From Octopus sinensis (Eukaryota): a DNA stretch of 64,000 nt. The notes beneath the pieces are model-generated. The model was not told the origin of the DNA. It was given only the letters and a program-made list of their open reading frames with translations, and searched no databases. A program made the position numbers and the translations under genes. The stretch covers positions 7,936,001 to 8,000,000 of the forward strand of contig NC_043024.1 of the NCBI RefSeq assembly GCF_006345805.1, read 5' to 3'. This document shows, one piece after another, positions 1-55,989 of this stretch (positions are counted from its first letter, which is position 1; each line of letters begins with the position of its first letter).

Positions 1-106
1 CATGAGGTAGCAGCTCAAGAGAGCTGCTGAAGACATGTCTGTATCATTCAGATGCTAGTGTCAAAAGAGCCCAAGATGGTTGTTATCTAACACGAGATCA
101 TTTCTA

Positions 107-523
107 GGATCTTTGCGGTTTGAACAGCAGTTTTTAAAAATAATTTCTACGTAACTAAACACTTTTAAACTTCGTATACTGGTAGAATATGTTTATAAAA
201 CATCTTTTTCTCTTGGCTTTATTGAGAAAATTCTATAGTTTGTAAGATATTTGTTGTTGTTTTTTTCTTCAATTTATGCAATTTCATCCAATCAATGACG
301 TCTATTGAGGTGAAAACATTCTGTGCCGTATGAATATGTCCCTCGTTTAAGAAACAGATTGGGTTTATTTACATTTGTGAAGAAAAAAGATACTCATCCC
401 CCACCCCTATCCCTAACCCTAAAACAGATTGAAATGCAATAGATCGATACTAGGGTCATAATTATGGGTGACAATTTCATATGACACCGCTAGAAAAAAT
501 TGCCGTTCAAACTGAAAAGATCC
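107..523 (+). mobile_element. Merlin-like MITE family M1, about 417 bp
   Basis: TIRs GGATCTTT(T/G)CGGTTTGAAC...GTTCAAAC(C/T)GAAAAGATCC; 8-bp TSD CATTTCTA at 99-106 and 524-531. GG-starting TIR plus 8-bp TSD fits Merlin (superfamily is inference). Confidence 0.85.
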
Positions 524-10976: not shown

Positions 10977-11303
10977 TCATCATCATCATTTAGCGTCCGC
11001 TTTCCATGCTAGCATGGGTTGGATGGTTCAACTGGGGTCTGGGAAACCAGAAGGCTGCACCAGGCCCAGTCTGATCTGGCAATGTTTCTATGGCTGGATG
11101 CCCTTCCTAACGCCAACCACTCCGTGAGTGTAGTGGGTGCTTTTTACGTGCCAGACGGTGCTGGCAAACGTCCACGGTCGGATGGTGCTTTTTACGTGCC
11201 ACCGGCACGGGGGCCAGGCGAGGCTGGCAACGGCATGTATATATATATATTGGGTCATCCCATAAATAATGCTGTGTTTTTATACTTTTATATGGGATGA
11301 CCC

Positions 11304-12224: not shown

Positions 12225-12770
12225 GTGCCGGTGGCACGTAAAAAGCACCCACTACACTCACGGAGCGGCTGGCGTTAGGAAGGGCATCCAGCTGTAGATA
12301 CACTGCCTGATCAGACTGGTGCCTGGTGCAGCCTCCTGGCTTCCCAGACCCCAGTCAAACCGTCCAACACATGCTAGCATGGAAAACAGACATCAAACAA
12401 TGATGATATATATGTATATATATATATATAGGGTCATCCCATATAAAAGTATAAAAACACAGCATTATTTATGGGATGACCCAATATATATATATACATG
12501 CCGTTGCCAGCCTCGCCTGGCCCCCGTGCCGGTGGCACGTAAAAAGCACCATCCAACCGTGGCCGTTTGCCAGCCTCGTCTGGCACCTGTGCCGGTGGCA
12601 CGTAAAAAGCACCCACTACACTCACGGAGTGGTTGGCGTTAGGAAGGGCATCCAGCCGTAGAAACACTGCCAGATCAGACTGGTGCCTGGTGCAGCCTCC
12701 TGGTTTCCCAGACCCCGGTCGAACCATCCAACCCATGCTAGCATGGAAAGCGGACATTCAACGATGATGA
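12225..12770 (+). repeat. Composite right arm of the long inverted repeat
   Basis: Mini MITE at 12430-12484 flanked by family C SINEs; reverse complement of 10977-11503. Confidence 0.85.
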
Positions 12771-17785: not shown

Positions 17786-18329
17786 ACATTTCAAAGTGGT
17801 TACTGAAGGAAATGTTCTTGTTTAAGTATATTAGAAGCTCCGTCCTTCATTTTGCGTTTTGAGTCGGATTTAAAATCTTGGTAGCATCGTCGTTGCTTTT
17901 CGTTTTCCGAGAAGTCGATAAAAAGGAAAGAAAAATTCCATGTATGTACTCCGATCGATTTTATCGATTCTCCTCTAGAATACGTGAAAACGGTTGGAAA
18001 AAAAAAACAAAAAAACAATCTAGCAGTATTTAGTATTGTGTGTTTTACATTTGAGTTCGAATTCATCAGTAGCCGATAAAAACGAATGGGAAACATTGGG
18101 GGTATTGATGGTGGTAGTGGATGAGGCGTGAATCATCTGCTTCGATTAGTCTTTGTAATAGAGAGTAGCGATTGGTAATGGTTGCAAATTTTGGCATAAG
18201 GCCAGCAATTTTAGGGAAGCGGTTAAGTCGATTACGCCGACGAGTGTTGGATTGAAATTTTATTTTACTGAACCCCAAAGGCAATGTCGACTTCGGCGAG
18301 ATTTGAACCCAGAGCATAAAAACCCGAAG

Positions 18330-18919
18330 AAATACCTATTTCTTGACTGCCCACAAGGGGCTAAACACAGAGAGGACAAACAAGGACGACAAATGGATTA
18401 AGTCGAGTATATCGACCCCAGTGCGTAACTGGTACTTATTTAATCGACCCCCGAAAGGATGAAAGGCAAAGTGGACCTCGGCCGAATTTGATCTCAGTAC
18501 GTAACGGCAGACGAAATGCCTATTTCTTTACTACCCACAAGGGGCTACACACTGAGGGGACAAACAAGGACAGACAAACGGATTAAGTCTATTATATCAA
18601 CCCCAGTGCGTAACTGGTACTTATTTAATCGACCCCCGAAAGGATGAAAGGCAAAGTCGACCTAGGCGGAATTTGAACTCACAACGTAACGGCAGACGAA
18701 ATACCTATTTCTTTACTACCCACAAGGGGCTACACACAGAGGGGACAAACAAGGACAGACAAACGGATTATGTCGATTATATCGATCCCAGTGCGTAACT
18801 GGTACTTATTTAATCGACCCCCGAAAGGATGAAAGGCAATGTCGACCTCGGCGGAATTTGAACTCAGAACGTAACGGTAGACGAAATACTGCCAAGCATT
18901 CCGCCCGGTGTGCTAACGT
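18330..18919 (-). repeat. SINE B with a triplicated 3' part (about 185-bp units)
   Basis: CCTATTTC junction at 18335, 18519 and 18704; head at about 18918. Confidence 0.9.
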
Positions 18920-19872
18920 TTCTGCCAGCTCGCCGCCTTTCTAATTACAATTCTTTCTAATTTTAGCGACAGTTTTTGAGAATGTGGGGGGGGGGGGTTC
19001 GATTACATCGAACGGTATCATATTTTATCGACCCCCGGTGGAAGAAAAGGCAAAGCTAACACCGGCAGAATTTGAACTCGGAATGTAATATAGTAATGAA
19101 ATGCTTTCGCATTTTGGCACAAAGCCAACAGTGCTAAGGGGAGGGAGCAAGTCGATTACATCGACCCCGGGTCTAACTGGAACTTTTATTTTATCGAACG
19201 CGAAAAAAGATGAAAGGCTAAGTCGACCTCGGGGGAATTTGAAATCTGAAACGTAAAGAGCCGGAAGAAATGCTACTATGCACTTTTTCCGGCGTACTAA
19301 CGATTCTTCTAGCTCGCCGCCTTGGTAATAAAAATAATAATTATTTCTTTACTACCCACAAGGGGCTAAACACAGAGGGGATAAACAAGGACAGATATCG
19401 ACCCCAGTGCGTAACTGGTACTTAATTTATCGACCCCGAAAGGATGAAAGGCAAAGTGGACCTCGGCGGAATTTGAACTCAGAACGTAACGGCAGACGAA
19501 ATACGGCTACGCATTTCGCCCGGCGTGCTACCGTTTCTGCCAGCTCGCCGCCTTAATAATAATAATGATTGCAAATAATTAATAACATAACGATTAATTA
19601 CTATAAATTAAATAATGCGGGCGGTGGGTGTGTGATAAAAATTTTGCTTCCCAACCACATGGTTCTGGGTTCGATCCTACTCCTTGTCACCTTGGGCAAG
19701 TGTGTTCCACTGTGGCCTCAGGGCGACCAAAACCTTCTGATGGAATTTGGTAGGGGAAATTGAAAGCAGCATGTGTGTCTGTGATTGTCCCTCATCACTG
19801 CTTGTCAACCGGTGTTGGTGTGTTTGTCTCTGTAACTTAGCGATTTGGCAGAAGAAACCGATAGAATAAGTG

Positions 19873-20399: not shown

Positions 20400-20794
20400 A
20401 ATCTTTGTACGATCGTGATAGCAGAGGCGGAGCAGATATGAAGTGCATATCTGCAGTTTCTGCTACTGCTGTTTGCTTGTTTATTGTCGTTGCTGCATCA
20501 AAGTAGTGCTTTTTTTGCAGCTGCTAACTGCTAGCTGCACACACATAGACCATTATTTACACACCAGTCATGGGTTGCTGCTATAGAATGCCCTTTTCGC
20601 AGCAGAGATAAACATATCGACTTGACGAACGAATAAGATTTCAGCTGTGTATAAAACATGACAGCGCGATGTCGTCGTTGTCATCGTTATGTTTTGACCT
20701 CCGCTTCTTCATCCTAGCGCGGGTTTAGCTTTAATGATATGTAGAACTATAACTTTGTTCGTGTTCGTGTGTGTGTGTATGCGTATACACACAG
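20400..20794 (+). promoter_or_regulatory. CpG-rich non-repetitive island; candidate alternative first exon
   Basis: Strong donor CAG|GTATGT at 20795; ATG at 20734 gives MICRTITLFVFVCVCMRIHT (phase 1); hairpin at 20419-20465. Confidence 0.3.
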
Positions 20795-20832
20795 GTATGT
20801 TTATGGTGTATACTTATTCACGTAGGCATGTT

Positions 20833-20875
20833 TTATTACTTCCGCCTTCGCTAAGGCGGGGGGTATTGTTTTCAG
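20833..20875 (+). mobile_element. Left end of a HINE/Helentron-type non-autonomous element
   Basis: TTATTACTTCCGCC...GGTATTGTTTTCAG resembles the TTATTACCTCCGCC start of this element type (from recall). Confidence 0.5.
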
Positions 20876-21135
20876 CTCTATTCTTTTCTTTTATTCTTTT
20901 ACTTGTTTCAGTCATTTGACTGCGGCCATGCTGGAGCACCGCCTTTAGTCGAGCAAATCGACCCCGGGACTTATTCTTTGTAAGCCCAGTACTTATTCTA
21001 TCGGTCTTTCTTTTGCCGAACCGCTTAGTGACGGGGACGTAAACACACCAGCATCGGTTGTCAAGCAATGCTAGGGGGACAAACACAGACACACAAACAC
21101 ACACACACTCATACACATATATACATATATACGAC

Positions 21136-21645
21136 AGGTCGACTTTGCTTTTCATCCTTTCGGGGTCGATAAATTAAGTACCAGTTACGCACTGGGGTCA
21201 AAATATAATCGACTTAATCCGTTTGTCTGTCCTTGTTTGTCCCTTCTATGTTTAGCCCCTTGTGGGTAGTAAAGAAATAGGTATTTCGTCTGCCGCTACG
21301 TTCTGAGTTCAAATTCCGCCGAGGTCGACTTTGTCTTTCATCCTTTCGGGGTCGATAAATTAAGTACCAGTTACGCACTGGGGTCGAAATATAATCGACT
21401 TAATCCGTTTGTCTGTCCTTGTTTGTCCCTTCTATGTTTAGCCCCTTGTGGGTAGTAAAGAAATAGGTATTTCGTCTGTCGTTACATTCTGAGTTCAAAT
21501 TCCGCCGAGGTCGACTTTGTCTTTCATCCTTTAGGGGTCGATAAATTAAGTACCAGTTACGCACTGGGGTCGATGTAATCGACTTAATACCTATGTCCCT
21601 GTTTGTCCCCTCTATGTTTAGCCCCTTGTGAGTAATAAAGAAATA
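21136..21645 (+). repeat. 3' part of SINE B, triplicated (about 186-bp units)
   Basis: AGGTCGACTTTG recurs three times; junction GAAATAGGTATTTC. Confidence 0.9.
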
Positions 21646-21847
21646 GGTACTACTAGCGAACAGTAGTCCCAGTGCGCGCGCTCGCGTAGTCGCGCTATCA
21701 AGTCATGACTAGTCGATCCTTACTTTGAGTTTTTGTTTTATTTACTTTGCCAGGTAGTCGTTTTAGGATCGACTAGTCACGACTAGCCGGTGCGGATGCG
21801 CAACTGCGCGTGCGCGCGCACCGGGACCACTGTTCGCTAGCAGTACC
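21646..21847. mobile_element. Merlin-like fold-back MITE M2
   Basis: 36-bp TIR GGTACT(A/G)CTAGCGAACAGT(A/G)GTCCC(A/G)GTGCGCGCGC plus an internal 19-bp inverted repeat; 9-bp TSD half CGTAATGTT at 21848-56, partner inverted at 22839-47. Confidence 0.8.
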
Positions 21848-22050
21848 CGTAATGTTTATAACTAAAACCCGCTCAAAAATATTTGCCACGTGACTGTTTA
21901 TGTGTACATGTATATAGATGTATGTATGTGTGTTATACACATATAAACATAAATATATATACATAAAGATACTATTATACGCTCTTTCTAGCACGTATAT
22001 ATAGAGACTAAGGCGGGCAAGCCGAAACTTCGAAGTCACAGTCAGCAAGA

Positions 22051-22207
22051 GCACTCAGAGAGCGCAAACCTCCGCCAAGGTAACACCAACGTCCTCTCAA
22101 CGATTAGCCGGAGATGATTTTTAAAATGAGAATATCTGAAATAAACCCGACTGCTCTCACAAGCGAGAATACTGAAAACGAACCTGGCCGCCCTCGAAAA
22201 TTATCAA
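22051..22207 (-). mobile_element. Right end of the HINE-type element, in inverted orientation
   Basis: Minus strand reads ...CCTTGGCGGAGGTTTGCGCTCTCTGAGTGC. Confidence 0.55.
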
Positions 22208-22305
22208 CTCTCTCTCTCTCTCTTTTACTCTTTTACTTGTTTCAGTCATTTGACTGCGGCCATGCTGGAGCACCGCCTTTAGTCGAGCAAATCGACCCCG
22301 GGACT

Positions 22306-22537
22306 GGTACTTGTCTATTGTCGTGGTCCCGGTTTCGCACACGCGAATTCGCGCGCGCGCGCGCCAGACGTAGACGGGAATTTTTTTTGGGGGGGGGGTT
22401 TAACGCGCATGCGCGAATTCTGCACTGCGCATGCGCAAGTCACCTCGTGGGATCTCGAGTATCGAGTACCTACGTCTGGCGCGCGCGCGCGCGAATTCGC
22501 GTGTGCGAAACCGGGACCACGACAATAGACAAGTACC
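22306..22537. mobile_element. Merlin-like fold-back MITE M3 inserted in a K SINE
   Basis: Perfect 68-bp TIR starting GGTACTTGTCTATTG; 8-bp TSD CCGGGACT (22298-22305, 22538-22545). Confidence 0.9.
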
Positions 22538-23057
22538 CCGGGACTTATTCTTTGTAAGCCCAGTACTTATTCTATCGGTCTCTCTTTTGCCGAACCGCTA
22601 AGTGACGGGGACGTAAACACACCAGCATCGGTTGTCAAGCAATGCTAGGGGGACAAACAGACACACAAACATACACACACACACACACACACAGACACAC
22701 ATATATACGACGGGCTTCTTTCAGTTTCCTCGGCGGAATTTGAACTCAGAACATAACGGCAGACGAAATACCGGTAAGCATTTCGCCCGGCGTGCTAACG
22801 TTTCTGCCAGCTCGCCCGCCTCGTTCGCTAGTAGTACCAACATTACGAACACGCAGAAAATGTCATGAGTGTAACATGTGTGTACACACGTACGCACACG
22901 CGGGTCGTTATTTTGTAAATAGCGGTTACTGTCCAAATATGCTATGGAAGCGCCGAACGACCGGTGCGCGTGTACGCATGTTCGCGCACGCGCACATACA
23001 GGTACACACACACGGATTGACGGAAATAGGTGGGGGCTAATTTTTTATTTTTTTTAA

Positions 23058-23877
23058 ATTTACTTGTTTCAGTCATTTGACTACGGCCATGCTGGAGCAC
23101 CGCCTTTAATCGTGCAACTTCGACCCCCGGGACTTATTCTTTTGTAAGCCCAGTACTTATTCTATCGGCCTCTCTTTTGCCGAACCGCTAAGTGACGGGG
23201 ACGTAAACACACCAGCATCGGTTGTCAAGCTATGCTAGGGGGACAAACACAGACACACACACACACACACACACACACATACTCTTTTACTTGTTTCAGT
23301 CATTTGACTACGGCCATGCTGGAGCACCGCCTTTAATCGTGCAACTTCGACCCCCGGGACTTATTCTTTTGTAAGCCCAGTACTTATTCTATCGGCCTCT
23401 CTTTTGCCGAACCGCTAAGTGACGGGGACGTAAACACACCAGCATCGGTTGTCAAGCTATGCTAGGGGGACAAACACAGACACACACACACACACACACA
23501 CATACTCTTTTACTTGTTTCAGTCATTTGACTACGGCCATGCTGGAGCACCGCCTTTAATCGTGCAACTCGACACCCGGGACTTATTCTTTTGTAAGCCC
23601 AGTACTTATTCTATCGGCCTCTCTTTTGCCGAACCGCTAAGTGACGGGGACGTAAACACACCAGCATCGGTTGTCAAGCGATGTTGGAGACACACACACA
23701 CACATACACACACACACACACATACACATATATATATATACATATATACGACGGGCTTCTTTCAGTTTCCGTCTACCAAATCCACTCACAAGGCATTGGT
23801 CGGCCCGAGGCTATAGCAGAAGACACTTGCCCAAGGTGCCGCTCACGGAACTGAACCCGGAACCATGTGGTTGGTTA
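23058..23877 (-). repeat. SINE K with a triplicated 3' half (223-227-bp units)
   Basis: TACTTGTTTCAGTC at 23061, 23288 and 23511; the third unit continues to the head. Confidence 0.9.
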
Positions 23878-29021: not shown

Positions 29022-29294
29022 ATAGGCGCAGGAGTGGCCGTGTGGTAAGTAGCTTGTTTACCAACCACATGGTTCCGTGTTCAGTCCCACTGCGTGGCAC
29101 CTTGGGCAAGTGTCTTTTACTATAGCCCCGGGCCGACCAAAGCCTTGTGAGTGGATTTGGTAGACGGAAACTGAAAGAAGCCTGTCGTATATATGTATAT
29201 ATATATATGCATGTGTGTTTGTGTGTCTGTGTTTATCCCCCTAGCATTGCATCAGTTGTCAAGCAATGCTAGGGGGACAAACACACACACACGC

Positions 29295-29325
<31 letters not shown>

Positions 29326-29493
29326 TACGACAGGCTTCTTTCAGTTTCCGTCTACCAAATCCACTCACAAGGCATTGGTCGGCCCGGGGCTATAGCAGAA
29401 GACACTTGCCCTAGATGCCACGCAGTGGGACTGAACCCGGAACTATGTGGTTGGTTAGCAAGCTACTTACCACACAGCCACTCCTGCGCCTAT
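29022..29493. repeat. Palindrome of two SINE K 5' halves
   Basis: 29022-29250 (+) and 29262-29493 (-), about 11-12-nt loop. Confidence 0.9.
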
Positions 29494-29949
29494 CTATGCT
29501 TTTCATCCTTTCAGGGTCAATAAAATAAGTACCAGTTTAATGCTGGGGTTGATGGAATTGACCTCCCCTCCTTCACCCAAAATCGCTGACCTTGTTCCAA
29601 AATTTGAAATCAATTATTACAAAGGTGGCATGCTGGCTGAATTTTTAGTGTGTTGGACAAAATACTTTGCGATATTTTTTGTCTGTATGTTCCGAGTTCA
29701 AATTCTGCTGAGGTCACCGTTACCTTTCATCCTCTTTGACCCCTGTGGTCTATGTAATTCACTGTCCCGCCTCTGCAGTTTCGAACCTTGTACCTATACT
29801 AGACAGAATTGCTGTTGTAAAATGGTATTCAATCATGCTTGCTTAGTGTTTTGAGTTCAAATCCCACTGTAGTAATAAACTTTTGCCTTCTAAGTGATTG
29901 AGAGGTGCGGCTGATAAAATAAACTAGAAGTCAAGTTTTGGGGCTAATT

Positions 29950-34895: not shown

Positions 34896-34968
34896 CCTAG
34901 TTAATCATTGATTCATTTATCATAGATCTTGGATAACATATTATGCTTAATTGTGAACCATGTTATAC

Positions 34969-35167
34969 TCTCTCTCTCTTTTACTCTTTTACTTGTTTCA
35001 GTCATTTGACTGCGGCCATGCTGGAGCACCGCCTTTAGTCAAGCAAATCGACCCCAGGACTTATTCTTTGTAAGCCCAGTACTTATTCTATCGGTCTCTT
35101 TTGCCGAACTGCTAAGTAACGGGGACATAAACACACCAGCATCGGTTGTCAAGCAATGCTAGGGGGA

Positions 35168-35215
<48 letters not shown>

Positions 35216-35389
35216 CACATATATGACGGGCTTCTTTCAGTTTCCGTCTACCAAATCCACTCACAAGGCTTTGGTCGGCCCGAGGCTATAGTAGAAGACA
35301 CTTGCCCAAGGTGCCACGCAGTGGGACTGAACCCGGAACCATGTGGTTGGTAAGCAAGCTACTTACCACACAGCCACTCCTGCGCCTAT
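34969..35389 (-). mobile_element. SINE K, full-length, young
   Basis: Intact head TAGGCGCAGGAGTGG on minus; inverted relative to 36661-37087 (+). Confidence 0.9.
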
Positions 35390-36097
35390 GACCATGGATT
35401 GTTTCGTTATTTTCGTTTATCGTTTAACGTCCGCATTCCATGCTAGCATGGGTTGGACGATTTGACTGAGGTCTGGCAAACCAGATGGCTGCACCAGACT
35501 CCATTCTGATCTGGCAGAGTTTCTACAGCTGGATGCCCTTCCTAACGCCAATTATCAATGTTATCACAGACTGGTATGTGATAACATGGGCTGCTTGTAC
35601 CATTGGCCACCCACAGTGCTCAGCTACCTAGAATGCTTTGGTTATTGCTTGTGTTTACATGACTGTGCTTTGAGGCTGTATGTATGGATTTAGTCATACC
35701 CATCAATGTGGAGGCACATGGACTAGTGGTTAGAGCAGCGGACTCGCGGTCGAGGGATCGCCGGTTCGAATCTCAGACCGGGTGATGTGTGTGTTTATGA
35801 GCGAAACACCTAAGCTCCACGCGGCTCCGGCAGAATGTAATGGCGAAACTTTTGCTGACTCTTTCGCCACAACTTTTTCTCACTCTTTCCTCCTGCACCT
35901 TGCAGCTCACCAGTGTCCTGTCCAGGTGGGGAACCTATACGCCAAGAAACTGGGAAACTGGTCCTTATGAGCCAGGCATGGCTCGAGAAGGAACAAACAA
36001 CAAAAAACAAAATCCCTTCAATATGGAACCAGTGAACGGAAAAAATGCAAAGGCAACTGATCCTAAAAAATGACACACACAAGTGTATTCTCTACAG

Positions 36098-44789: not shown

Positions 44790-45510
44790 CCCTTCACTCC
44801 CTGCGGAGTAAGTTAAGTTAGTTAATTTTTTGGCTCAAAAAGCAAAAAGCAAGGCCATGTAAGGGGACATGGAGTTATGTACAAGGAGGGGGTTCATGCA
44901 AAGAGTTCAGGCCATTTCTGGTCAAGAGAGACTTTGGAACCGAGCAGTCGTCAGCATCTTCACTATCTCGTCCGGCAGCTTATTCCACGGATCCGCAACC
45001 CGGATGGAGAAAGCCCCTCTCCTTCGATTGAGATGAAATCGTCGCAGATAGAGCTTTTCGGAGTGACCCCGCAGCCGACGCTCTGGAGCAGAGTGAAGAA
45101 CAGCTCTTTCGAGAGGTTACACTTTCCGCTTATGATGTTGTGAGCGAGAATGAGATCACTACGGCGGCTGCGTTTTTTGAGAGAATAAAGGTCGAGTGTC
45201 TTCAGCCTTTCTTCATAAGACAAATGCTTGAGACCAAGAACCATGCGGGTAGCCAGCTTCTGGACTCTTTCGAAATGATGTATGTCTATAAGGAGAAGAG
45301 GCTTGAATCCCGTACTCCAGTATGGGTCTCACCAGCGTGACATAGAGCAGTAGGAATATGGCTGCTGTGAGTATCGGCCGTCAGCAAAATTTCTGCATTG
45401 TTCTCATGTGTAGGATATTTTTTCTGCTTCTCTTCAGTTGGATCCGTGCTTTCTCAGTTCCATCTCAGTATCCTGCTTCATGTGCTTCCCTGAGAGAAGG
45501 CCTTCCTCTC
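44790..45510 (-). mobile_element. CR1-clade LINE 3' fragment
   Basis: ERVQKLATRMVLGLKHLSYEERLKTLDLYSL.KR.R..DLI is a typical CR1 RT C-terminus; (TAACT)-type tail near 44810. Confidence 0.9.
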
Positions 45511-47010: not shown

Positions 47011-47934
47011 TGCATGTGTATGTATGTATGTATGTATGTGTGTGTACCCTTCTCCTTACATTGCATGATGGTTGTAAACAAGCATTATAAGTGATGTTCA
47101 TTTCCAGACTCCTATGGCACTGGGGAAATACTATTTTCTGCTGTAGAAAATCTGCCTCAACCAATTCTATCCAACCCATGCAAGCATGGAAAAGAGGACA
47201 TTGAAGTGATGATTTTCCTCACTCCTTGGTGTCAATCTGACCTCACAGCCGAAAATCTTAGACTGCATTCCCTGCCTACTTCTCTCTCTCGTCTCCATAC
47301 GTCATTGTCTATCACACACAAGTCTCCACACGAAATAGCATGTATAATTTTCATTTTTCTACCTTTCTCTGTAATTCTCTTATGTCGTTTGTTTTTATTT
47401 TTTTTTATTGAATTTATTTTGTAGCATTTCTTTTTTTTTTCTTCTCCTCCTTACACAAGCATAGGGTTGTGTATGTTTGCAAATTTTTAGTAATTTCAGT
47501 AATTATATCAGCATAAATATTTTGGGGGAGATATTTACTACTTGCATATTCCTTTCTATATGTAATCAATCAGCCTTGAAATGATAATCAATTTTTCATC
47601 ATAATTGAACACAAAGCAAGCATAGTAGTAGAATATATTGAGCCCATTCATTACCACATTTCTACTGAAATACACTTCCAATTAATTTTTAAAATAATGA
47701 AGAATTTATTAAATTAACCATTATTAAGTTGCTGTTTCGAACATAAATTAATAAGGAATTTTGATGGAAGGTTTTAACTAAAATTCACTTTTACTCTTTC
47801 GTTGCCATATTTCTACTGAATTACATTGCCCTTATTTTGATTAATTTTGAAAATAATGAAAAATTTATTAAAATAAATTTGTCATGAAGCTGGTGTTTAG
47901 AACAAGGGTACACACTCATGGGCATATATTAGGG

Positions 47935-48345
47935 GGTGCTGGCAGAAACGTTAGCACGCCGGGTGAAATGCGTAGCCGTATTTCGTCTACCGTTACGTTC
48001 TGAGTTCAAATTCCGCCGAGGTCGACTTTGCCTTTCATCCTTTCGGGGTCGATAAATTAAGTACCAGTTGCACGCTGGGGTCGATGTAATCGACTTAATC
48101 CGTTCGTCTGTCCTTGTTTGTCCCCTCTGTGTTTAGCCCCTTGTGGGTAGTAAAGAAATAGGTATTTCGTCTGCCGTTACGTTCTGAGTTCAAATTCCGC
48201 CGAGGTCGACTTTGCCTTTCATCCTTTCGGGGTCGATAAATTAAGTACCAGTTACGCACAAGGGTCCATATAATCGACTTAATCCATCTGTCTGTCCTTG
48301 TTCGTCCCCTCTGTGTTTAGCCCCTTGTGGGTAGTAAAGAAATTT
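47935..48345 (+). repeat. SINE B with a duplicated 3' part
   Basis: Junction GAAATAGGTATTTC near 48155-48168. Confidence 0.9.
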
Positions 48346-49734: not shown

Positions 49735-50222
49735 ATCATCATCATCATCATTGTTTAGCGTCCGCTTTCCATGCTGGCATGGGTTGGACAGTTCAACTGG
49801 GGTCTGGGAAGCCAGAAGGCCGCACCAGGCCCAGTCTGATCTGGCAGTGTTTCTATGGCTGGATGCCCTTCCTAACGCTAACCACTCCATGAGTGTAGTG
49901 GGTGCTTTTTACGTGCCAGACGAGGCTGGCAAACGACCACGATCGGATGGTGCTTTTTACGTGCCACCGGCACGGATGCCAGGCGAGGCTGGCAATGGCC
50001 ACAATCGGATGGTGCTTTTTACGTGCCACCGGCACAGAGGCCAGGCGAGGCTGGCAACGGCCACGATCGGATGGTGCTTTTTACGTGCCACCGGCACACA
50101 GGCCAGGCGAGGCTGGCAACAGCCACGATCGGATGGTGCTTTTTACGTGCCAGTGGCACAGAGGCCAGGCGAGGCTGGCAACGGCCACGATCGGATGGTG
50201 ATTTTTACGTGCCAGTGGCACC
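49735..50222 (-). repeat. Family C element with about six internal 56-bp tandem units
   Basis: Repeats of GGCGAGGCTGGCAAC.GCCACGATCGGATGGTGCTTTTTACGTGCCA. Confidence 0.9.
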
Positions 50223-50979
50223 AAATAACTTATAAGACAAAGATCCCTTGAAAGTGAAGGGTGAATTGGAGGAGGTGATCTTGTGTCAGCTGATGAAAGG
50301 TTAGAGTGTGACAGAGAGACAGAAACAGGTGTGTTGCTGTGGAGGAGTTACATGGTTACTCAGCCAGAGAGAGGGAGCGTGTCTGATGAAGGATGAGGAC
50401 AGAAACAGGTGTGTGCTGCTGTAAAGGAGATAAATGGTTAACTATCCTGAGGGAAGAGTAAGAGAAGGAAAGAGAGAGCAGGAGAGAGAGATGGTGGTGA
50501 ATTAGATTTAAATTGTAGAAAGACTATGTTCTGACATCATTGCAGTAATTTCTCAGTCAGTTAATCAAAGCTGTGGTTATTGTGTGTGTGTGTGTGTAAT
50601 AAATGTTTTGTTAATTATTGCATATTGTGCTTGATGTCAGCACCCAAAAGGGTCATACTGACTATAGAAGTGTACCAACTGTTGATATATTTATTTTTGT
50701 CTGGCAAATACCATTTGATATTCCCTATCACCTCTGCTATTGCTTTTTTCTTTTTTTTGTCTCTCTCTCTCTTGCTGGAGATATTTCACTCTTCTTTCTC
50801 TGTCTGTCTGTCCGTCGCTCTCTCTTGCTCATGAGATTTTCCTTTCTCTTTCACATTCTTTTTACTTGTATGTGTGTATGCATGAATGTGTGTGTATGTC
50901 TGTATGTGTGAATGTATATATAAATGTTTGTGTATGTATGTATATGCATGCTTATGTATGTCTGGATGAACATATATAT

Positions 50980-53648: not shown

Positions 53649-55989
53649 TAGGAATGTGATGTTTTCTATTTTTCTGAGGGGGTGGGCAGGTCATTAAATC
53701 GTTTCCATCGTAGTTTTGGGGTGACAAATTTAAGGAGAAAAGTTACATAAATCAATTTCATGTATGTCAGTATTTGACCAGGTGTGAAGGGGCATGGCTC
53801 AGTGGTTAGAGTGTTGGGCTCACAATCAAGAGGTAGTGAGTTCAATTTCTAGGCTGGGCTGTGTGTTGTGTTCTTGAGCAAGACAGGGAGAGGCTCATTG
53901 ATTCCATTGACCCAGTGTTTGATTTATTCTCGATTTTATCAACCTTGGTAGGATGAAAGGCAAAGGCAACAGTTGATTGTATGAGGATTTGAGCTCAAAA
54001 TATGAAACAAGCTGTGGTTAAGAGGCTTGCTTCCCAAACCTGTGATTCTGGGTTCAGTCCTAATGCGAGGCACCTTAGAATCGAACTTTTTTGAGTTGAA
54101 CTGTGTCTGTTAATGTGTTGAAGTTTATTAGTAGGTTGCTCGACCTGCTTGAAATAGCAGCCAAATTCCCCTCATATCACAGTGATGTCTTAGCCCCTTA
54201 GTGTTCAGATTATTCCATCAAACATAATGCTTATTGATTCCCATTGATTTGAATTAATCATGCATTATCTCATATCTTCAAGATCTTGATGGTGTAATTA
54301 CTTAATTTAGAATAGCATTGTAGGGTAGGTGTGAGAGCCTGGATCTGGTCAGTTTGAACATAAAACAGGTTAAATATTTTGGCCGAATATGGCCGGTTTA
54401 GATACTAAAGGGTTAAAAGAAATCTTTGTCTCTGTCACTCAGCCTGCTAGAATATGCTTCCTTAACCCTTTAGCATTTAAACCAGCCATGTCCTACCAAA
54501 ATATTCTACCTTGTTCAAACTGGCCAGATCTAACTTCTTATACCAACTCTACAATATCATTCTAACAAATTAACAGTTACCTCATCAAAATCTCATAACC
54601 ACAAAATAAGGCATGATTAAATCAAAACAATCATCATCATCATCGTTTAACGTCTGCTTTCCATGCTAGCATGGGTTGGACGGTGCAACTGGGGTCTGGG
54701 AAGCCAGAAGGCTGCACCAGGCTCCAATCTTGATCTGGCAATGTTTCTACAGCTGGATGCCCTTCCTAACGCCAACCACTCCGTGAGTGTAGTGGGTGCT
54801 TTTTATGTGCCAGTCGAGGCTGGCAAACGACCACGATCGGATGGTGCTTTTTATGTGCCACCGGCACGGAGGCCAGTCAGGGCGGCGCTGGCTACGGCCA
54901 CGTTCGGATGGTTCTCTAGCTACAAATTCCATTGATGTTGCTCAATTGTGATTTTGATTTTCAACAATGTGAATAAAAAAAAAAGCATTATTTTTGACAG
55001 AATAATGCGACTGCTAAAGAGTTAACCCTTTCGTTACCGTATTTATTTTTGAGATGCTCTGTGTTTCTTTCAATTAATTTTAGATATAACAAAGAATTTA
55101 GTAAAATAACTTAGTTATCATTAAGCTAGTGTTAGGGACATAAATTGTGACTAAGGTTTGGTGGAAGATTTTAATCCAAAACTTATGAAAACAAGACATT
55201 TGTACTCAGAGCCAGAGCCGGGTTAGTAACAAAAGGGTTAAACCAGCCAGATTGAGCTCAAAATGTTCAAACTGATCGGATCTGACCTCTCACACCTACC
55301 CAACAATGTCATTCAAAAAGAAAAGCTGCAAAATAATGCATGATTAACAATGTGAATGAATGGAGATTAATCTGAGGGCTAATGGGTTAATGCCCATCCT
55401 GTTATTTGTGTTGAGCCGGTGACAACCTTCTTTATGATTTATTCAAAGCGTTTAAATATATCTTTGTCACTGATATACCATTATCAATTTGAAGTAAAAG
55501 CCTAGTTTCATAATCGCCTCCTCTCTCCTGCACACCTCCACAAAAGAAAGATTTCTTCACACCCACCTCCTCCAACTCATACCTACTGAGATGGGAGCAG
55601 AAGTGAAGGCTTTAGTGACAGTTTAATTACCCCTTTTATTCAGAATGTTTGGTCAATTGGTAGTTTGATCCCCCTTATCAAGTATGGTATAATTTAGGTA
55701 GAGGGACAGTTAAATTTAGGGGGAAGGGGAAAAGCTTTGCCCTTTAGCACTTGAAAAATATTCGTAGTTGCCTGCCTAATTAGCTATATAAATTATAGCT
55801 TTAAATATGTACCATTTCATTATACAATGTGTGTCTGAGCTATCATGAAAGCCTCTTCTCTGTCTGGTCCAGTGGAACCTGTATTCTCAATGTTTTGTGA
55901 TCTCCTCATTTGCTGTGCTCCTTTCTCGAATTTCCTCACTCCAGATATGCTCCCATAATGATATGCTCCCTAATTCCTAGCATGGACCA

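What the first reader, a model, noticed from the sequence alone, without database searches (positions are those of the whole stretch)
20833..22847. A 1.6-kb inversion readable from split TSDs, with K SINEs at both breakpoints
Flipping about 21136-22730 repairs four independent features. (1) The 9-bp TSD of MITE M2, CGTAATGTT (21848-56) and its reverse complement (22839-47), becomes direct. (2) The 16-bp GGTACTACTAGCGAAC (21646-61) and GTTCGCTAGTAGTACC (22823-38) become a direct TSD around a SINE B inserted in the M2 TIR. (3) The SINE B halves rejoin exactly as AAAGTCGACCTCGGCGGAATTTG. (4) The HINE subterminal motifs ACTTCCGCC (20838) and ACCTCCGCC (22068) return to inverted orientation. Same-orientation K SINE 3' halves (20881-21135 and 22208-22729) sit at the two breakpoints, so simple recombination between inverted copies does not explain it. 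Either both ends of a break primed SINE reverse transcription (dual TPRT) or a K/K palindrome broke at its centre. Both would be unusual routes to an inversion inside a promoter-rich region.
Basis: partly seen in the sequence, partly recalled or inferred. Interest (0 to 1): 0.7.

Follow-up and report, generated by a model that had tools for sequence, protein, structure and literature searches.

The report
Small inversion capped by two SINEs
About 1.1 kb of repeat-filled animal DNA has been flipped, and each of the two new joints is filled by a shortened copy of the same short retroposon (SINE) pointing the same way, which suggests the flip happened while a chromosome break was patched by reverse transcription, a route so far described mainly for human L1 elements in tumours and cultured cells.

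Summary
The core observation holds. A MITE (M2) carries a SINE B insertion in its left terminal repeat. SINE B is now split at one point: its body, M2 and one 9-bp TSD lie on the + strand (21136-21856), and its head, the 16-bp TSD and the other 9-bp TSD lie on the - strand (22730-22847). Flipping in silico rebuilds a nested structure with direct TSDs. The rebuilt SINE B aligns without indels to five other window copies.

Both new joints carry a 5'-truncated K SINE on the same strand. The K tails touch the left flank (~20879) and the far end of the flipped piece (22207). The truncated K 5' ends touch the two sides of the SINE B break. K1 and K2 are each other's closest relatives (2/190 differences).

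The fourth claimed feature, the "HINE" motifs, is at chance level. Whether the flipped piece is 1.07 or 1.6 kb cannot be told.

Best reading (about 0.45): both 3' ends of one break primed K reverse transcription, and the two cDNAs were joined to the ends of a second break 1.07 kb away. Rivals are a K/K palindrome that later broke, a pre-existing K2, and mis-assembly (unlikely).

No outside sequence for this locus could be found, so the ancestral state is untested. I rate it a new variant of a known kind, of moderate interest.

The parts
20700..20878 (.). Left flank L, unique in the window. Its 3' end (...GTTTTCAGCTC) is the primer end next to the K1 tail, on the left side of breakpoint J1. The boundary is uncertain by about 5 bp.
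   Evidence: No other copy in the window. The K tail starts at ~20879-20881.
20879..21135 (-). K1, a 5'-truncated K SINE covering K consensus positions ~166-414. Its simple-repeat 3' tail is at the low-coordinate end next to L. Its truncated 5' end (GTCGTATAT...) is fused to the SINE B body.
   Evidence: Alignment to full-length K copies.
21136..21645 (+). SINE B body and 3' end, with 2.8 tandem units of 186 bp. It starts at AGGTCGAC, immediately after the break (J2, body side).
   Evidence: TRF. Alignment to other one-, two- and three-unit SINE B copies.
21646..21661 (+). 16-bp GGTACTACTAGCGAAC. This is the terminal part of the M2 left inverted repeat and one copy of the SINE B target-site duplication.
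21646..21847 (+). MITE M2: 202 bp, with 50-nt terminal inverted repeats 88% complementary.
   Evidence: repeat I2. It is the only copy of its family in the window.
21848..21856 (+). 9-bp M2 target-site duplication CGTAATGTT (right copy).
21857..22207 (+). Unique DNA originally to the right of M2. Its end at 22207 (...AAAATTATCAA) is the second primer end, next to the K2 tail (right side of J1 before the flip).
   Evidence: Only low-complexity matches elsewhere in the window. The K2 tail begins at 22208.
22208..22729 (-). K2, a 5'-truncated K SINE covering K positions 146-423 (282 bp without the nested MITE). Its tail is at 22208 and its truncated 5' end (GGAAACTG...) is fused to the SINE B head.
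22306..22537 (.). MITE M3 nested in K2. It has 68-nt perfect inverted repeats and the TSD CCGGGACT (22298-22305 and 22538-22545). It inserted after the inversion.
   Evidence: repeat I1. Sequence read.
22730..22822 (-). SINE B head, 93 nt (J2, head side). Bases 22728-22729 (CC) fit both SINE B and the K2 5' end.
22823..22847 (-). Second copy of the 16-bp SINE B TSD (M2 left-end variant) followed by the left copy of the 9-bp M2 TSD.
22848..23056 (.). Unique flank originally to the left of M2.

Best explanation
This is a real, balanced inversion of about 1.07 kb (21136-22207), made in one repair event coupled to SINE retrotransposition.

**History before the event (shown by nesting).** M2 inserted with a 9-bp TSD. 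SINE B then inserted into M2's left terminal repeat with a 16-bp TSD.

**The event (inferred).**
1. A double-strand break opened at J1, between what is now ~20878 and 22207.
2. Both of its 3'-OH ends primed reverse transcription on the simple-repeat tails of two K SINE RNAs.
3. Both cDNAs stopped just past the internal microsatellite, at K positions ~166 and 146.
4. The two cDNA ends were joined by end joining, with 0-2 nt of microhomology, to the two ends of a second break (J2) inside SINE B, 1072 bp away.
5. The ends were paired the wrong way round, so the intervening piece was reinserted flipped.

This gives L-K1-[flipped piece]-K2-T, with both K copies on one strand. Whether J1 was cut by the partner LINE's endonuclease or was a pre-existing break that captured K cDNA cannot be told.

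**After the event.** MITE M3 inserted into K2.

No function is implied. The structure is a scar that records a mechanism.
For: **Shown**
- The split, inverted SINE B and both TSD pairs are exact, and the flip restores a colinear nest.
- Both joints are filled by K copies. The variable (GTAAAAGA)n(GA)n tails abut L and 22207, and the truncated 5' ends abut the two sides of one SINE B position.
- Reverse transcription starts at the RNA 3' end, so the two primers were the two ends of J1.
- With about 36 K fragments in 64 kb, a K end falling on both joints by chance is of order 1e-5.
- K1 and K2 differ by 2 of 190 bases with no indel in the non-microsatellite body. The nine other window copies differ from them by at least 6 substitutions plus indels.
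- Their tails and microsatellites differ markedly. They are therefore two cDNAs from closely related templates, not a DNA duplication.
- The truncation points are 20 nt apart.
- No SINE B base is lost at J2, and 1-3 nt may be duplicated, as expected for one clean break.

**Precedent**
- In human tumours, the two cDNA ends of one L1 event can engage two distant break ends and form two retroelement bridges. Extension lengths from the two primers correlate (bioRxiv 10.1101/2024.08.27.596794).
- L1 breaks give local inversions of about 1 kb (10.1101/2024.12.14.628481).
Against: - No target-site duplication or inverted overlap is detectable at J1. The best shared 8-mer has a 6.5% chance level and the local alignment gives p of about 0.2.
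- The ancestral adjacency of L and 22207 is unverified. A deletion at J1 cannot be excluded.
- Tail priming by both ends needs two RNA molecules, or re-use of one. This is not the classic twin-priming pattern.
- K sense orientation rests on A/B-box-like motifs, a common 5' start and variable tails. ARAGORN and Rfam did not recognise a tRNA.
- Only 11 K copies were available to judge that K1 and K2 are sisters. Gene conversion between nearby copies could mimic it.
- No reads, haplotypes or sister genomes could be examined.
Confidence: 0.45

Rival explanations
1. Two steps via a palindrome. Both ends of the J1 break primed K cDNAs, or two K copies inserted head to head and lost the DNA between them. 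The cDNAs were first joined to each other, giving a tails-outward K1/K2 palindrome with a ~21-nt spacer. Later this unstable palindrome was cut at the stem-loop border and, together with a second break in SINE B, resolved as a 1595-bp inversion (21136-22730). That turned the inverted K pair into a direct pair.
For: - Flipping 21136-22730 gives arms that start at GTCGTATAT on both sides, with K2's extra 20 nt as the loop. The break lies exactly at the arm/loop border, where hairpin nucleases cut.
- Long near-perfect palindromes are known fragile sites (established knowledge).
- The window holds another K/K palindrome at 29022-29493.
Against: - It needs two events and a second, unrelated break.
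- It still needs double priming, or two coincident insertions, to build the palindrome.
- The other palindrome in the window is heads-outward, so it arose differently and is no direct precedent.
- Nothing in the sequence requires an intermediate.
Confidence: 0.2
2. K2 was there first. K2 was an ordinary 5'-truncated insertion into SINE B, with a TSD of up to 4 bp (GAGG). Later a single K1 retrotransposition at J1 went wrong: the resected reciprocal end folded back and was remodelled. This inverted the 1072 bp between J1 and the K2 tail, as in the 'L1 insertion with local inversion of the reciprocal end' class.
For: - 1-3 bases (A, or AGG) are present on both sides of J2 and could be a short K TSD.
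- K TSDs in the window are short, e.g. 6 bp at 34968-35390.
- Local inversions of about 0.9 kb next to a single L1 insertion are documented (10.1101/2024.12.14.628481).
- The (GA)n tail offers microhomology with ...CAACTC at the end of the flipped piece.
Against: - The distal fold-back point and the flap cut would both have to fall exactly at the old K2-tail/SINE B boundary. No (GA)n remnant is left at 21136.
- K1 and K2 would be of different ages, yet they are nearest relatives.
- In six other K copies with tails the base after the tail is T, usually TAT. In this reading it would have been AGGTCG; in the present arrangement it is TTGATA. This is weak evidence.
- The shared orientation of the two K copies would be a coincidence.
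Confidence: 0.12
3. Assembly artefact: the true genome has the uninverted order.
For: - The region is dense in repeats.
- No reads could be examined.
Against: - Assemblers flip segments between long inverted repeats. Here the flanking K copies are direct, and the only inverted repeats across the segment are 45 nt (I3 and I4).
- Both joints are unique fusions of differently truncated K ends to the two sides of a single SINE B position.
- K1 and K2 have different tails and microsatellites, so they are not a collapsed repeat.
- A chimeric read would not create two reciprocal, K-filled joints.
Confidence: 0.06
4. Ectopic recombination between inverted repeats (K/K or SINE B/SINE B) produced the inversion.
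For: This is the commonest TE-linked route to inversions, e.g. Galileo in Drosophila (PMC2775673, listed).
Against: - K1 and K2 are direct, not inverted.
- Recombination would leave full-length chimeric elements. Here truncated K ends are fused to SINE B.
- Both halves of SINE B carry the same TSD, so they come from one element.
Confidence: 0.01

Closest known systems
L1-mediated reciprocal inversions and rearrangements with two retroelement 'bridges' in human tumours (Zumalave et al., bioRxiv 10.1101/2024.08.27.596794)
   Same: - There is a retroelement insertion at both junctions of a balanced rearrangement.
- One described variant has the two growing cDNA ends of a single insertion site engaging the ends of distant breaks.
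- The cDNA lengths from the two primers correlate.
   Different: - There the element is the autonomous L1, in somatic tumour cells, and events are kb to Mb in size.
- The second cDNA is primed internally on the same RNA (twin priming), or two separate insertion sites take part, giving bridges of opposite orientation.
- Here two non-autonomous SINE cDNAs both start at the RNA tail and lie in the same orientation.
- The inversion is 1 kb and is present in a genome assembly of an invertebrate, so presumably germline.
L1 insertions with local inversion or inverted duplication of adjacent genomic DNA (Mendez-Dorantes et al., bioRxiv 10.1101/2024.12.14.628481)
   Same: - The size class matches (917 bp in their example against 1072 bp here).
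- One breakpoint lies at the retrotransposition target.
- Junctions are end-joined with little or no homology.
   Different: Their events carry one insertion at one junction, and the other junction is a direct DNA-DNA joint with microhomology. Here both junctions carry a K copy.
Twin priming (Ostertag and Kazazian 2001, Genome Res 11:2059; cited)
   Same: Both 3' ends of the target break act as primers for reverse transcription.
   Different: Twin priming inverts the 5' part of the inserted element, not host DNA. Its second primer anneals inside the same RNA, so only one tail is present. Here there are two tails and the host DNA is inverted.
Endonuclease-independent LINE-1 insertion at pre-existing breaks (Morrish et al. 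2002, Nat Genet 31:159; cited)
   Same: Retroelement cDNA is used as a patch in double-strand break repair. There is no clear TSD and no recognisable endonuclease site.
   Different: Those insertions are often 3'-truncated and fill one break. Here both copies keep tails, and two joints of one rearrangement are filled.
Inversions by ectopic recombination between inverted transposon copies (e.g. Galileo, PMC2775673)
   Same: Transposable elements sit at both breakpoints.
   Different: That route needs inverted copies and leaves chimeric full-length elements with exchanged TSDs. Neither holds here.

Membership tests
Simple two-break inversion | A single flip restores colinearity of features that span a breakpoint | tested here: met
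   The flip makes the 9-bp and 16-bp TSD pairs direct and rebuilds SINE B with no indel against five copies.
Simple two-break inversion | The second breakpoint is also restored to a verifiable ancestral sequence | tested here: inconclusive
   The DNA on both sides of J1 is unique in the window. The 'HINE' motifs are at chance level. No outgroup was found.
Inversion by recombination between inverted repeats | Homologous copies in inverted orientation at the two breakpoints | tested here: not met
   K1 and K2 lie on the same strand.
Twin priming (classic) | One RNA: the first primer anneals at the tail, the second inside the RNA, and the inverted part is element sequence | tested here: not met
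   Both K copies carry a 3' tail and overlap over K positions ~166-414. The inverted part is host DNA.
Retroelement-bridged (two-bridge) inversion | A retroelement cDNA at each of the two inversion junctions | tested here: met
   K1 lies at L/21136 and K2 at 22207/22730.
Retroelement-bridged (two-bridge) inversion | The tail of each bridge abuts a primer end that shows the endonuclease target motif | not testable with these tools
   The tails abut L and 22207. The partner LINE and its cleavage preference are unknown, and too few K copies are available.
Retroelement-bridged (two-bridge) inversion | TSD-like duplication shared by the two ends of the cut site | tested here: inconclusive
   Nothing above chance at J1. 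1-3 nt are possibly duplicated at J2.
tRNA-derived SINE (K and SINE B) | The 5' head is recognisable as a tRNA | tested here: not met
   ARAGORN found 0 genes. Rfam gave no tRNA match on a K head or on the SINE B head. Only A/B-box-like motifs are seen by eye.
SINE (retroposon) in general | Many dispersed copies with a common 5' start, a variable simple-repeat 3' tail, 5' truncations and TSDs | tested here: met
   K. SINE B TSDs of about 9-16 bp are visible in the flanks of the alignment.
MITE (M2) | Terminal inverted repeats flanked by a direct TSD | tested here: met
   50-nt TIRs, 88% complementary. The 9-bp TSD becomes direct after the flip.
MITE (M2) | Multiple copies in the genome | tested here: not met
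   No second copy in the 64-kb window. The rest of the genome was not available.

The most novel reading that the evidence does not exclude
A germline, naturally fixed example in an invertebrate (probably a cephalopod) of a balanced inversion made in one step. Both ends of a single chromosomal break each primed reverse transcription on the tail of a non-autonomous SINE RNA, and the two cDNAs bridged to a second break. This would be 'double tail priming', distinct from classic twin priming. It would show that SINEs, not only L1, can sculpt small inversions during evolution.
Probability: 0.35. Interest if true: 0.6.

Novelty: new variant of a known kind. Interest (0 to 1): 0.42.

Why it matters
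Small inversions are hard to detect and their origins are mostly unknown. Retroelement-bridged inversions have so far been shown for human L1 in tumours and in over-expression models. A sequence-resolved scar in a SINE-rich invertebrate genome would extend this in two ways. It would show that the same class of accident happens in the germline with non-autonomous SINEs. It would also show that both ends of a break can start cDNA synthesis at an RNA tail.

The locus also gives a clear, searchable signature for genome-wide surveys: an element split into oppositely oriented halves, with same-strand 5'-truncated SINE copies at both joints. There is no sign of any functional consequence at this locus.

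Tried and rejected
- **TSD or inverted overlap at J1.** The 8-mer GTTTTCAG / CTGAAAAC (20868-75 and 22170-77) looked promising. An 8-mer or longer is shared by 6.5% of random window pairs, and the ~30-nt local alignment has p of about 0.2. Rejected.
- **'HINE' element.** The unique DNA has no second copy, the motif match is at chance level, and ACTTCCGCC and ACCTCCGCC each occur only once, at the stated positions. TAAGGCGG at 20852 and 22009 resembles the 5' start of SINE B copies, but nothing more aligns.
- **Staggered-break duplication and replicative template switching from a single K.** These predict inverted K copies or identical tails. The K copies are direct, and their tails and microsatellites differ.
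- **Two synchronous insertions, one at J1 and one at J2.** This predicts either both K copies in one junction or opposite orientations with tails at L and T. Neither is seen.
- **Link to the K/K palindrome at 29.0-29.5 kb as the 'missing 5' halves'.** Rejected. The palindrome arms overlap K1 and K2 by 65-106 nt of K sequence, including unique bases.
- **Outside evidence.** Exact look-ups of three junction-spanning ORFs found nothing. A protein homology search with the ORF over 22724-23011 gave no hit. A metagenome scan with a locus-specific 24-mer gave no match. A full-text search for three SINE sequence strings found 0 papers.
- **Rfam and ARAGORN.** Only sub-threshold microsatellite 'miRNA' hits and no tRNA.
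- **Organism.** Not established. The K element looks to me like an octopus SINE, but that is recollection, not a test.
Full report
**What the window is.** It is AT-rich eukaryotic DNA packed with short interspersed repeats, microsatellites and MITEs. I found no convincing protein-coding gene. I could not establish the organism. The K element resembles octopus SINEs as I remember them, which is a lead and not a test.

**The repeat families involved**
- **K SINE.** K is about 420 bp.
  - Full-length copies such as 34968-35390 start at (CAT)AGGCGCAGGAGTGGCTG, with A/B-box-like motifs.
  - They carry an internal (TA/TG)n microsatellite and end in ...ACTGAAACAAGTAAAAG followed by a variable (AGTAAAAG)n(AG)n tail.
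- **SINE B.** Its sense strand starts (A/G)AGGCGG(G)CGAGCTGGCAGAAACG and ends ...GTAAAGAAATA.
  - It occurs as one-, two- and three-unit forms with a 186-bp internal period.
  - Its copies have TSDs of about 9-16 bp, visible in the flanks.
- **tRNA origin.** Neither ARAGORN nor Rfam recognises a tRNA in the heads. The sense assignment therefore rests on promoter-like motifs, the shared 5' start and the variable simple-repeat tail.

**Checking the observation**
- The 25-mer CGTAATGTT+GGTACTACTAGCGAAC occurs once, on the minus strand at 22823-22847, against zero matches in 100 shuffles.
- The 16-mer is the outermost part of the left terminal inverted repeat of MITE M2 (21646-21847; 50-nt TIRs).
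- M2's right repeat has G at position 7, while both other copies have A. The copy at 22823-38 is therefore a duplicate of the left end, as expected if SINE B inserted 16 bp inside that end and duplicated it.
- After removing K1 and K2 and flipping 21136-22207, the order becomes: 9-bp TSD, M2, 16-mer, SINE B, 16-mer, 9-bp TSD.
- The rebuilt SINE B aligns to five other copies without any gap at the joint. The rejoined 23-mer is found in five other SINE B units.
- A scan of the window for SINE halves that are complementary in consensus coordinates but opposite in strand found only this case.
- Features 1-3 are therefore real and far beyond chance, although they are facets of one nested structure.
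- Feature 4 (the HINE motifs) is not evidence. 9-mers sharing at least 8 of 9 bases between these stretches occur in 75% of shuffles, and there is no second copy of the surrounding DNA.

**The two joints**
- K1 (~20879-21135) and K2 (22208-22305 plus 22546-22729, interrupted by MITE M3) lie on the same strand.
- Both keep their 3' tails and both are 5'-truncated, at K positions ~166 and 146.
- The tails abut the left flank L and base 22207.
- The truncated ends abut AGGTCGAC... (SINE B body, 21136) and ...TCGGCGG (SINE B head, 22730).
- No SINE B base is missing. One base (A/T), or up to three (AGG/CCT), is present on both sides, and the CC at 22728-9 fits K as well.

**What follows from the geometry**
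- A cDNA is attached to its primer by the complement of the RNA's 3' end. The two primers were therefore the + strand 3' end of L and the + strand 3' end at 22207.
- In the unflipped arrangement these are the two 3' ends of one double-strand break, J1. The two acceptor ends are the two sides of another break, J2, in SINE B.
- The geometry excludes recombination between inverted repeats, because the copies are direct and truncated.
- It excludes staggered-break duplication, which would give inverted copies.
- It excludes two independent insertion sites exchanging ends. That would put both K copies in one joint, or give opposite orientations.

**Relationship of K1 and K2**
- Over 190 non-microsatellite bases they differ at 2 positions with no indel. 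They share a combination of variants that no other window copy has; the nearest others differ by at least 6 substitutions plus indels.
- Their tails (GTAAAAGAATAAAAGAAAAGAATAGAG against GTAAAAGAGTAAAAGAGAGAGAGAGAGAG) and their microsatellites differ substantially.
- This fits two cDNAs made from closely related templates at about the same time. It does not fit a DNA-level duplication.
- Eleven copies is a small sample, so this evidence is supportive and not decisive.

**Most likely mechanism (confidence about 0.45)**
1. A break opened at J1.
2. Both 3' ends primed K reverse transcription at the RNA tail.
3. Both cDNAs stopped shortly after the microsatellite.
4. They were end-joined to the two ends of a second break 1072 bp away, with the intervening piece flipped.

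The structure and the order of the nested events are shown: M2, then SINE B, then the inversion with K1 and K2, then M3. The simultaneity, the origin of the breaks and the repair pathway are inferred. I cannot tell whether a LINE endonuclease made J1 or a pre-existing break captured K cDNA. No TSD or overlap is detectable at J1, and the partner LINE is unknown.

**Rivals**
- **(a) Palindrome first (0.2).**
  - Joining the two cDNAs to each other would give a tails-outward K/K palindrome with a 21-nt loop.
  - The observed break is exactly at the arm/loop border, which a hairpin nuclease would favour.
  - This reading needs two events.
- **(b) K2 already in SINE B, followed by a K1 insertion with fold-back remodelling of the reciprocal end (0.12).**
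  - It matches the published L1 class with about 0.9-kb local inversions.
  - It needs both distal processing points to fall exactly on the old K2 boundary.
  - It also leaves the K1/K2 similarity and the shared orientation as coincidences.
- **(c) Mis-assembly (0.06).**
  - This is unlikely, because the flanking repeats are direct and both joints are unique fusions.
  - The two K copies are also clearly distinct.
  - No reads were available to test it.

**Comparison with what is known**
- Retrotransposition-linked inversions are established for human L1.
  - Local inversions occur next to an insertion (10.1101/2024.12.14.628481).
  - Balanced inversions with two L1 bridges are described. One case has the two cDNA ends of one twin-primed event engaging two distant break ends (10.1101/2024.08.27.596794).
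- The present locus works like that class but differs in four respects.
  - The elements are non-autonomous SINEs.
  - Both cDNAs start at a tail, whereas in classic twin priming the second primer anneals internally and only element sequence is inverted.
  - The event is about 1 kb in size.
  - It sits in a genome assembly of an invertebrate, so it is presumably germline.
- A large human long-read survey lists twin-priming inversions inside L1 inserts. In the passages I searched it does not list this configuration (PMC12350158).
- I therefore file it as a new variant of a known kind, not as a member of classic twin priming.

**Limits**
- Everything rests on one 64-kb window.
- Attempts to find the locus elsewhere failed, so the ancestral state, the J1 joint and the polymorphism status remain untested. 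These attempts were exact ORF look-ups, a protein homology search and a metagenome scan.
- The steps that would decide between the readings are listed under next steps.

Noticed in passing
window 29022-29493: There is a heads-outward K/K palindrome here. K positions 2-238 (+) and 2-252 (-) meet at 29249/50. The arms are about 95% alike and share variants that other copies lack. The flanks beyond the heads are unrelated, and the right arm abuts a 5'-truncated SINE B body at 29494. Priming from both ends of a break cannot produce this arrangement, and its origin is unexplained.
   Followed up: partly
window 23059-23875: Three tandem copies of the K 3' part (period 227, 95% matches) are joined tail to microsatellite. 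They lie on the same strand as K1 and K2 but belong to a different K subfamily.
   Followed up: partly
window 21136-21649, 18277-18938, 47932-48343: SINE B exists as multi-unit forms with a 186-bp internal tandem period. Each extra unit begins with the last ~45 nt of the head. It is unclear whether they transpose in this form or expand in place.
   Followed up: partly
window 22306-22537: MITE M3 is nested in K2, with 68-nt perfectly complementary terminal repeats and the TSD CCGGGACT. It is very young. Its ends (GGTACT...GTCCCGG) resemble those of M2, which suggests one DNA-transposon superfamily that was recently active.
   Followed up: partly
window ~22888-22975: There is a small GC-rich inverted-repeat structure here (GTACGCACACGCGGGTCGTT ... 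AACGACCGGTGCGCGTGTAC) in the flank next to the M2 site. It may be a decayed MITE.
   Followed up: no
window 44963-45244 (-): A 93-aa ORF (MVLGLKHLSYEERLKTLDLYSLKKRSRR...) looks like the C-terminal part of a LINE reverse transcriptase. It could be a remnant of a partner LINE for one of the SINEs. It was not searched.
   Followed up: no
window 11019-11300, 12434-12757, 49751-50251, 54663-54935: Recurrent ORF-like translations (...LDALPNANHSVSVVGAFYVP...) mark another interspersed repeat family, present in both orientations.
   Followed up: no
window 20852 and 22009: The motif CTAAGGCGG, which is the usual 5' start of SINE B copies, occurs in the unique DNA on both sides of the presumed J1. At 22010-22079 it is followed about 60 nt later by CCTCCGCCAAGG, which resembles the end of the SINE B head. 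This may be a decayed tRNA-like head, but nothing aligns significantly.
   Followed up: partly
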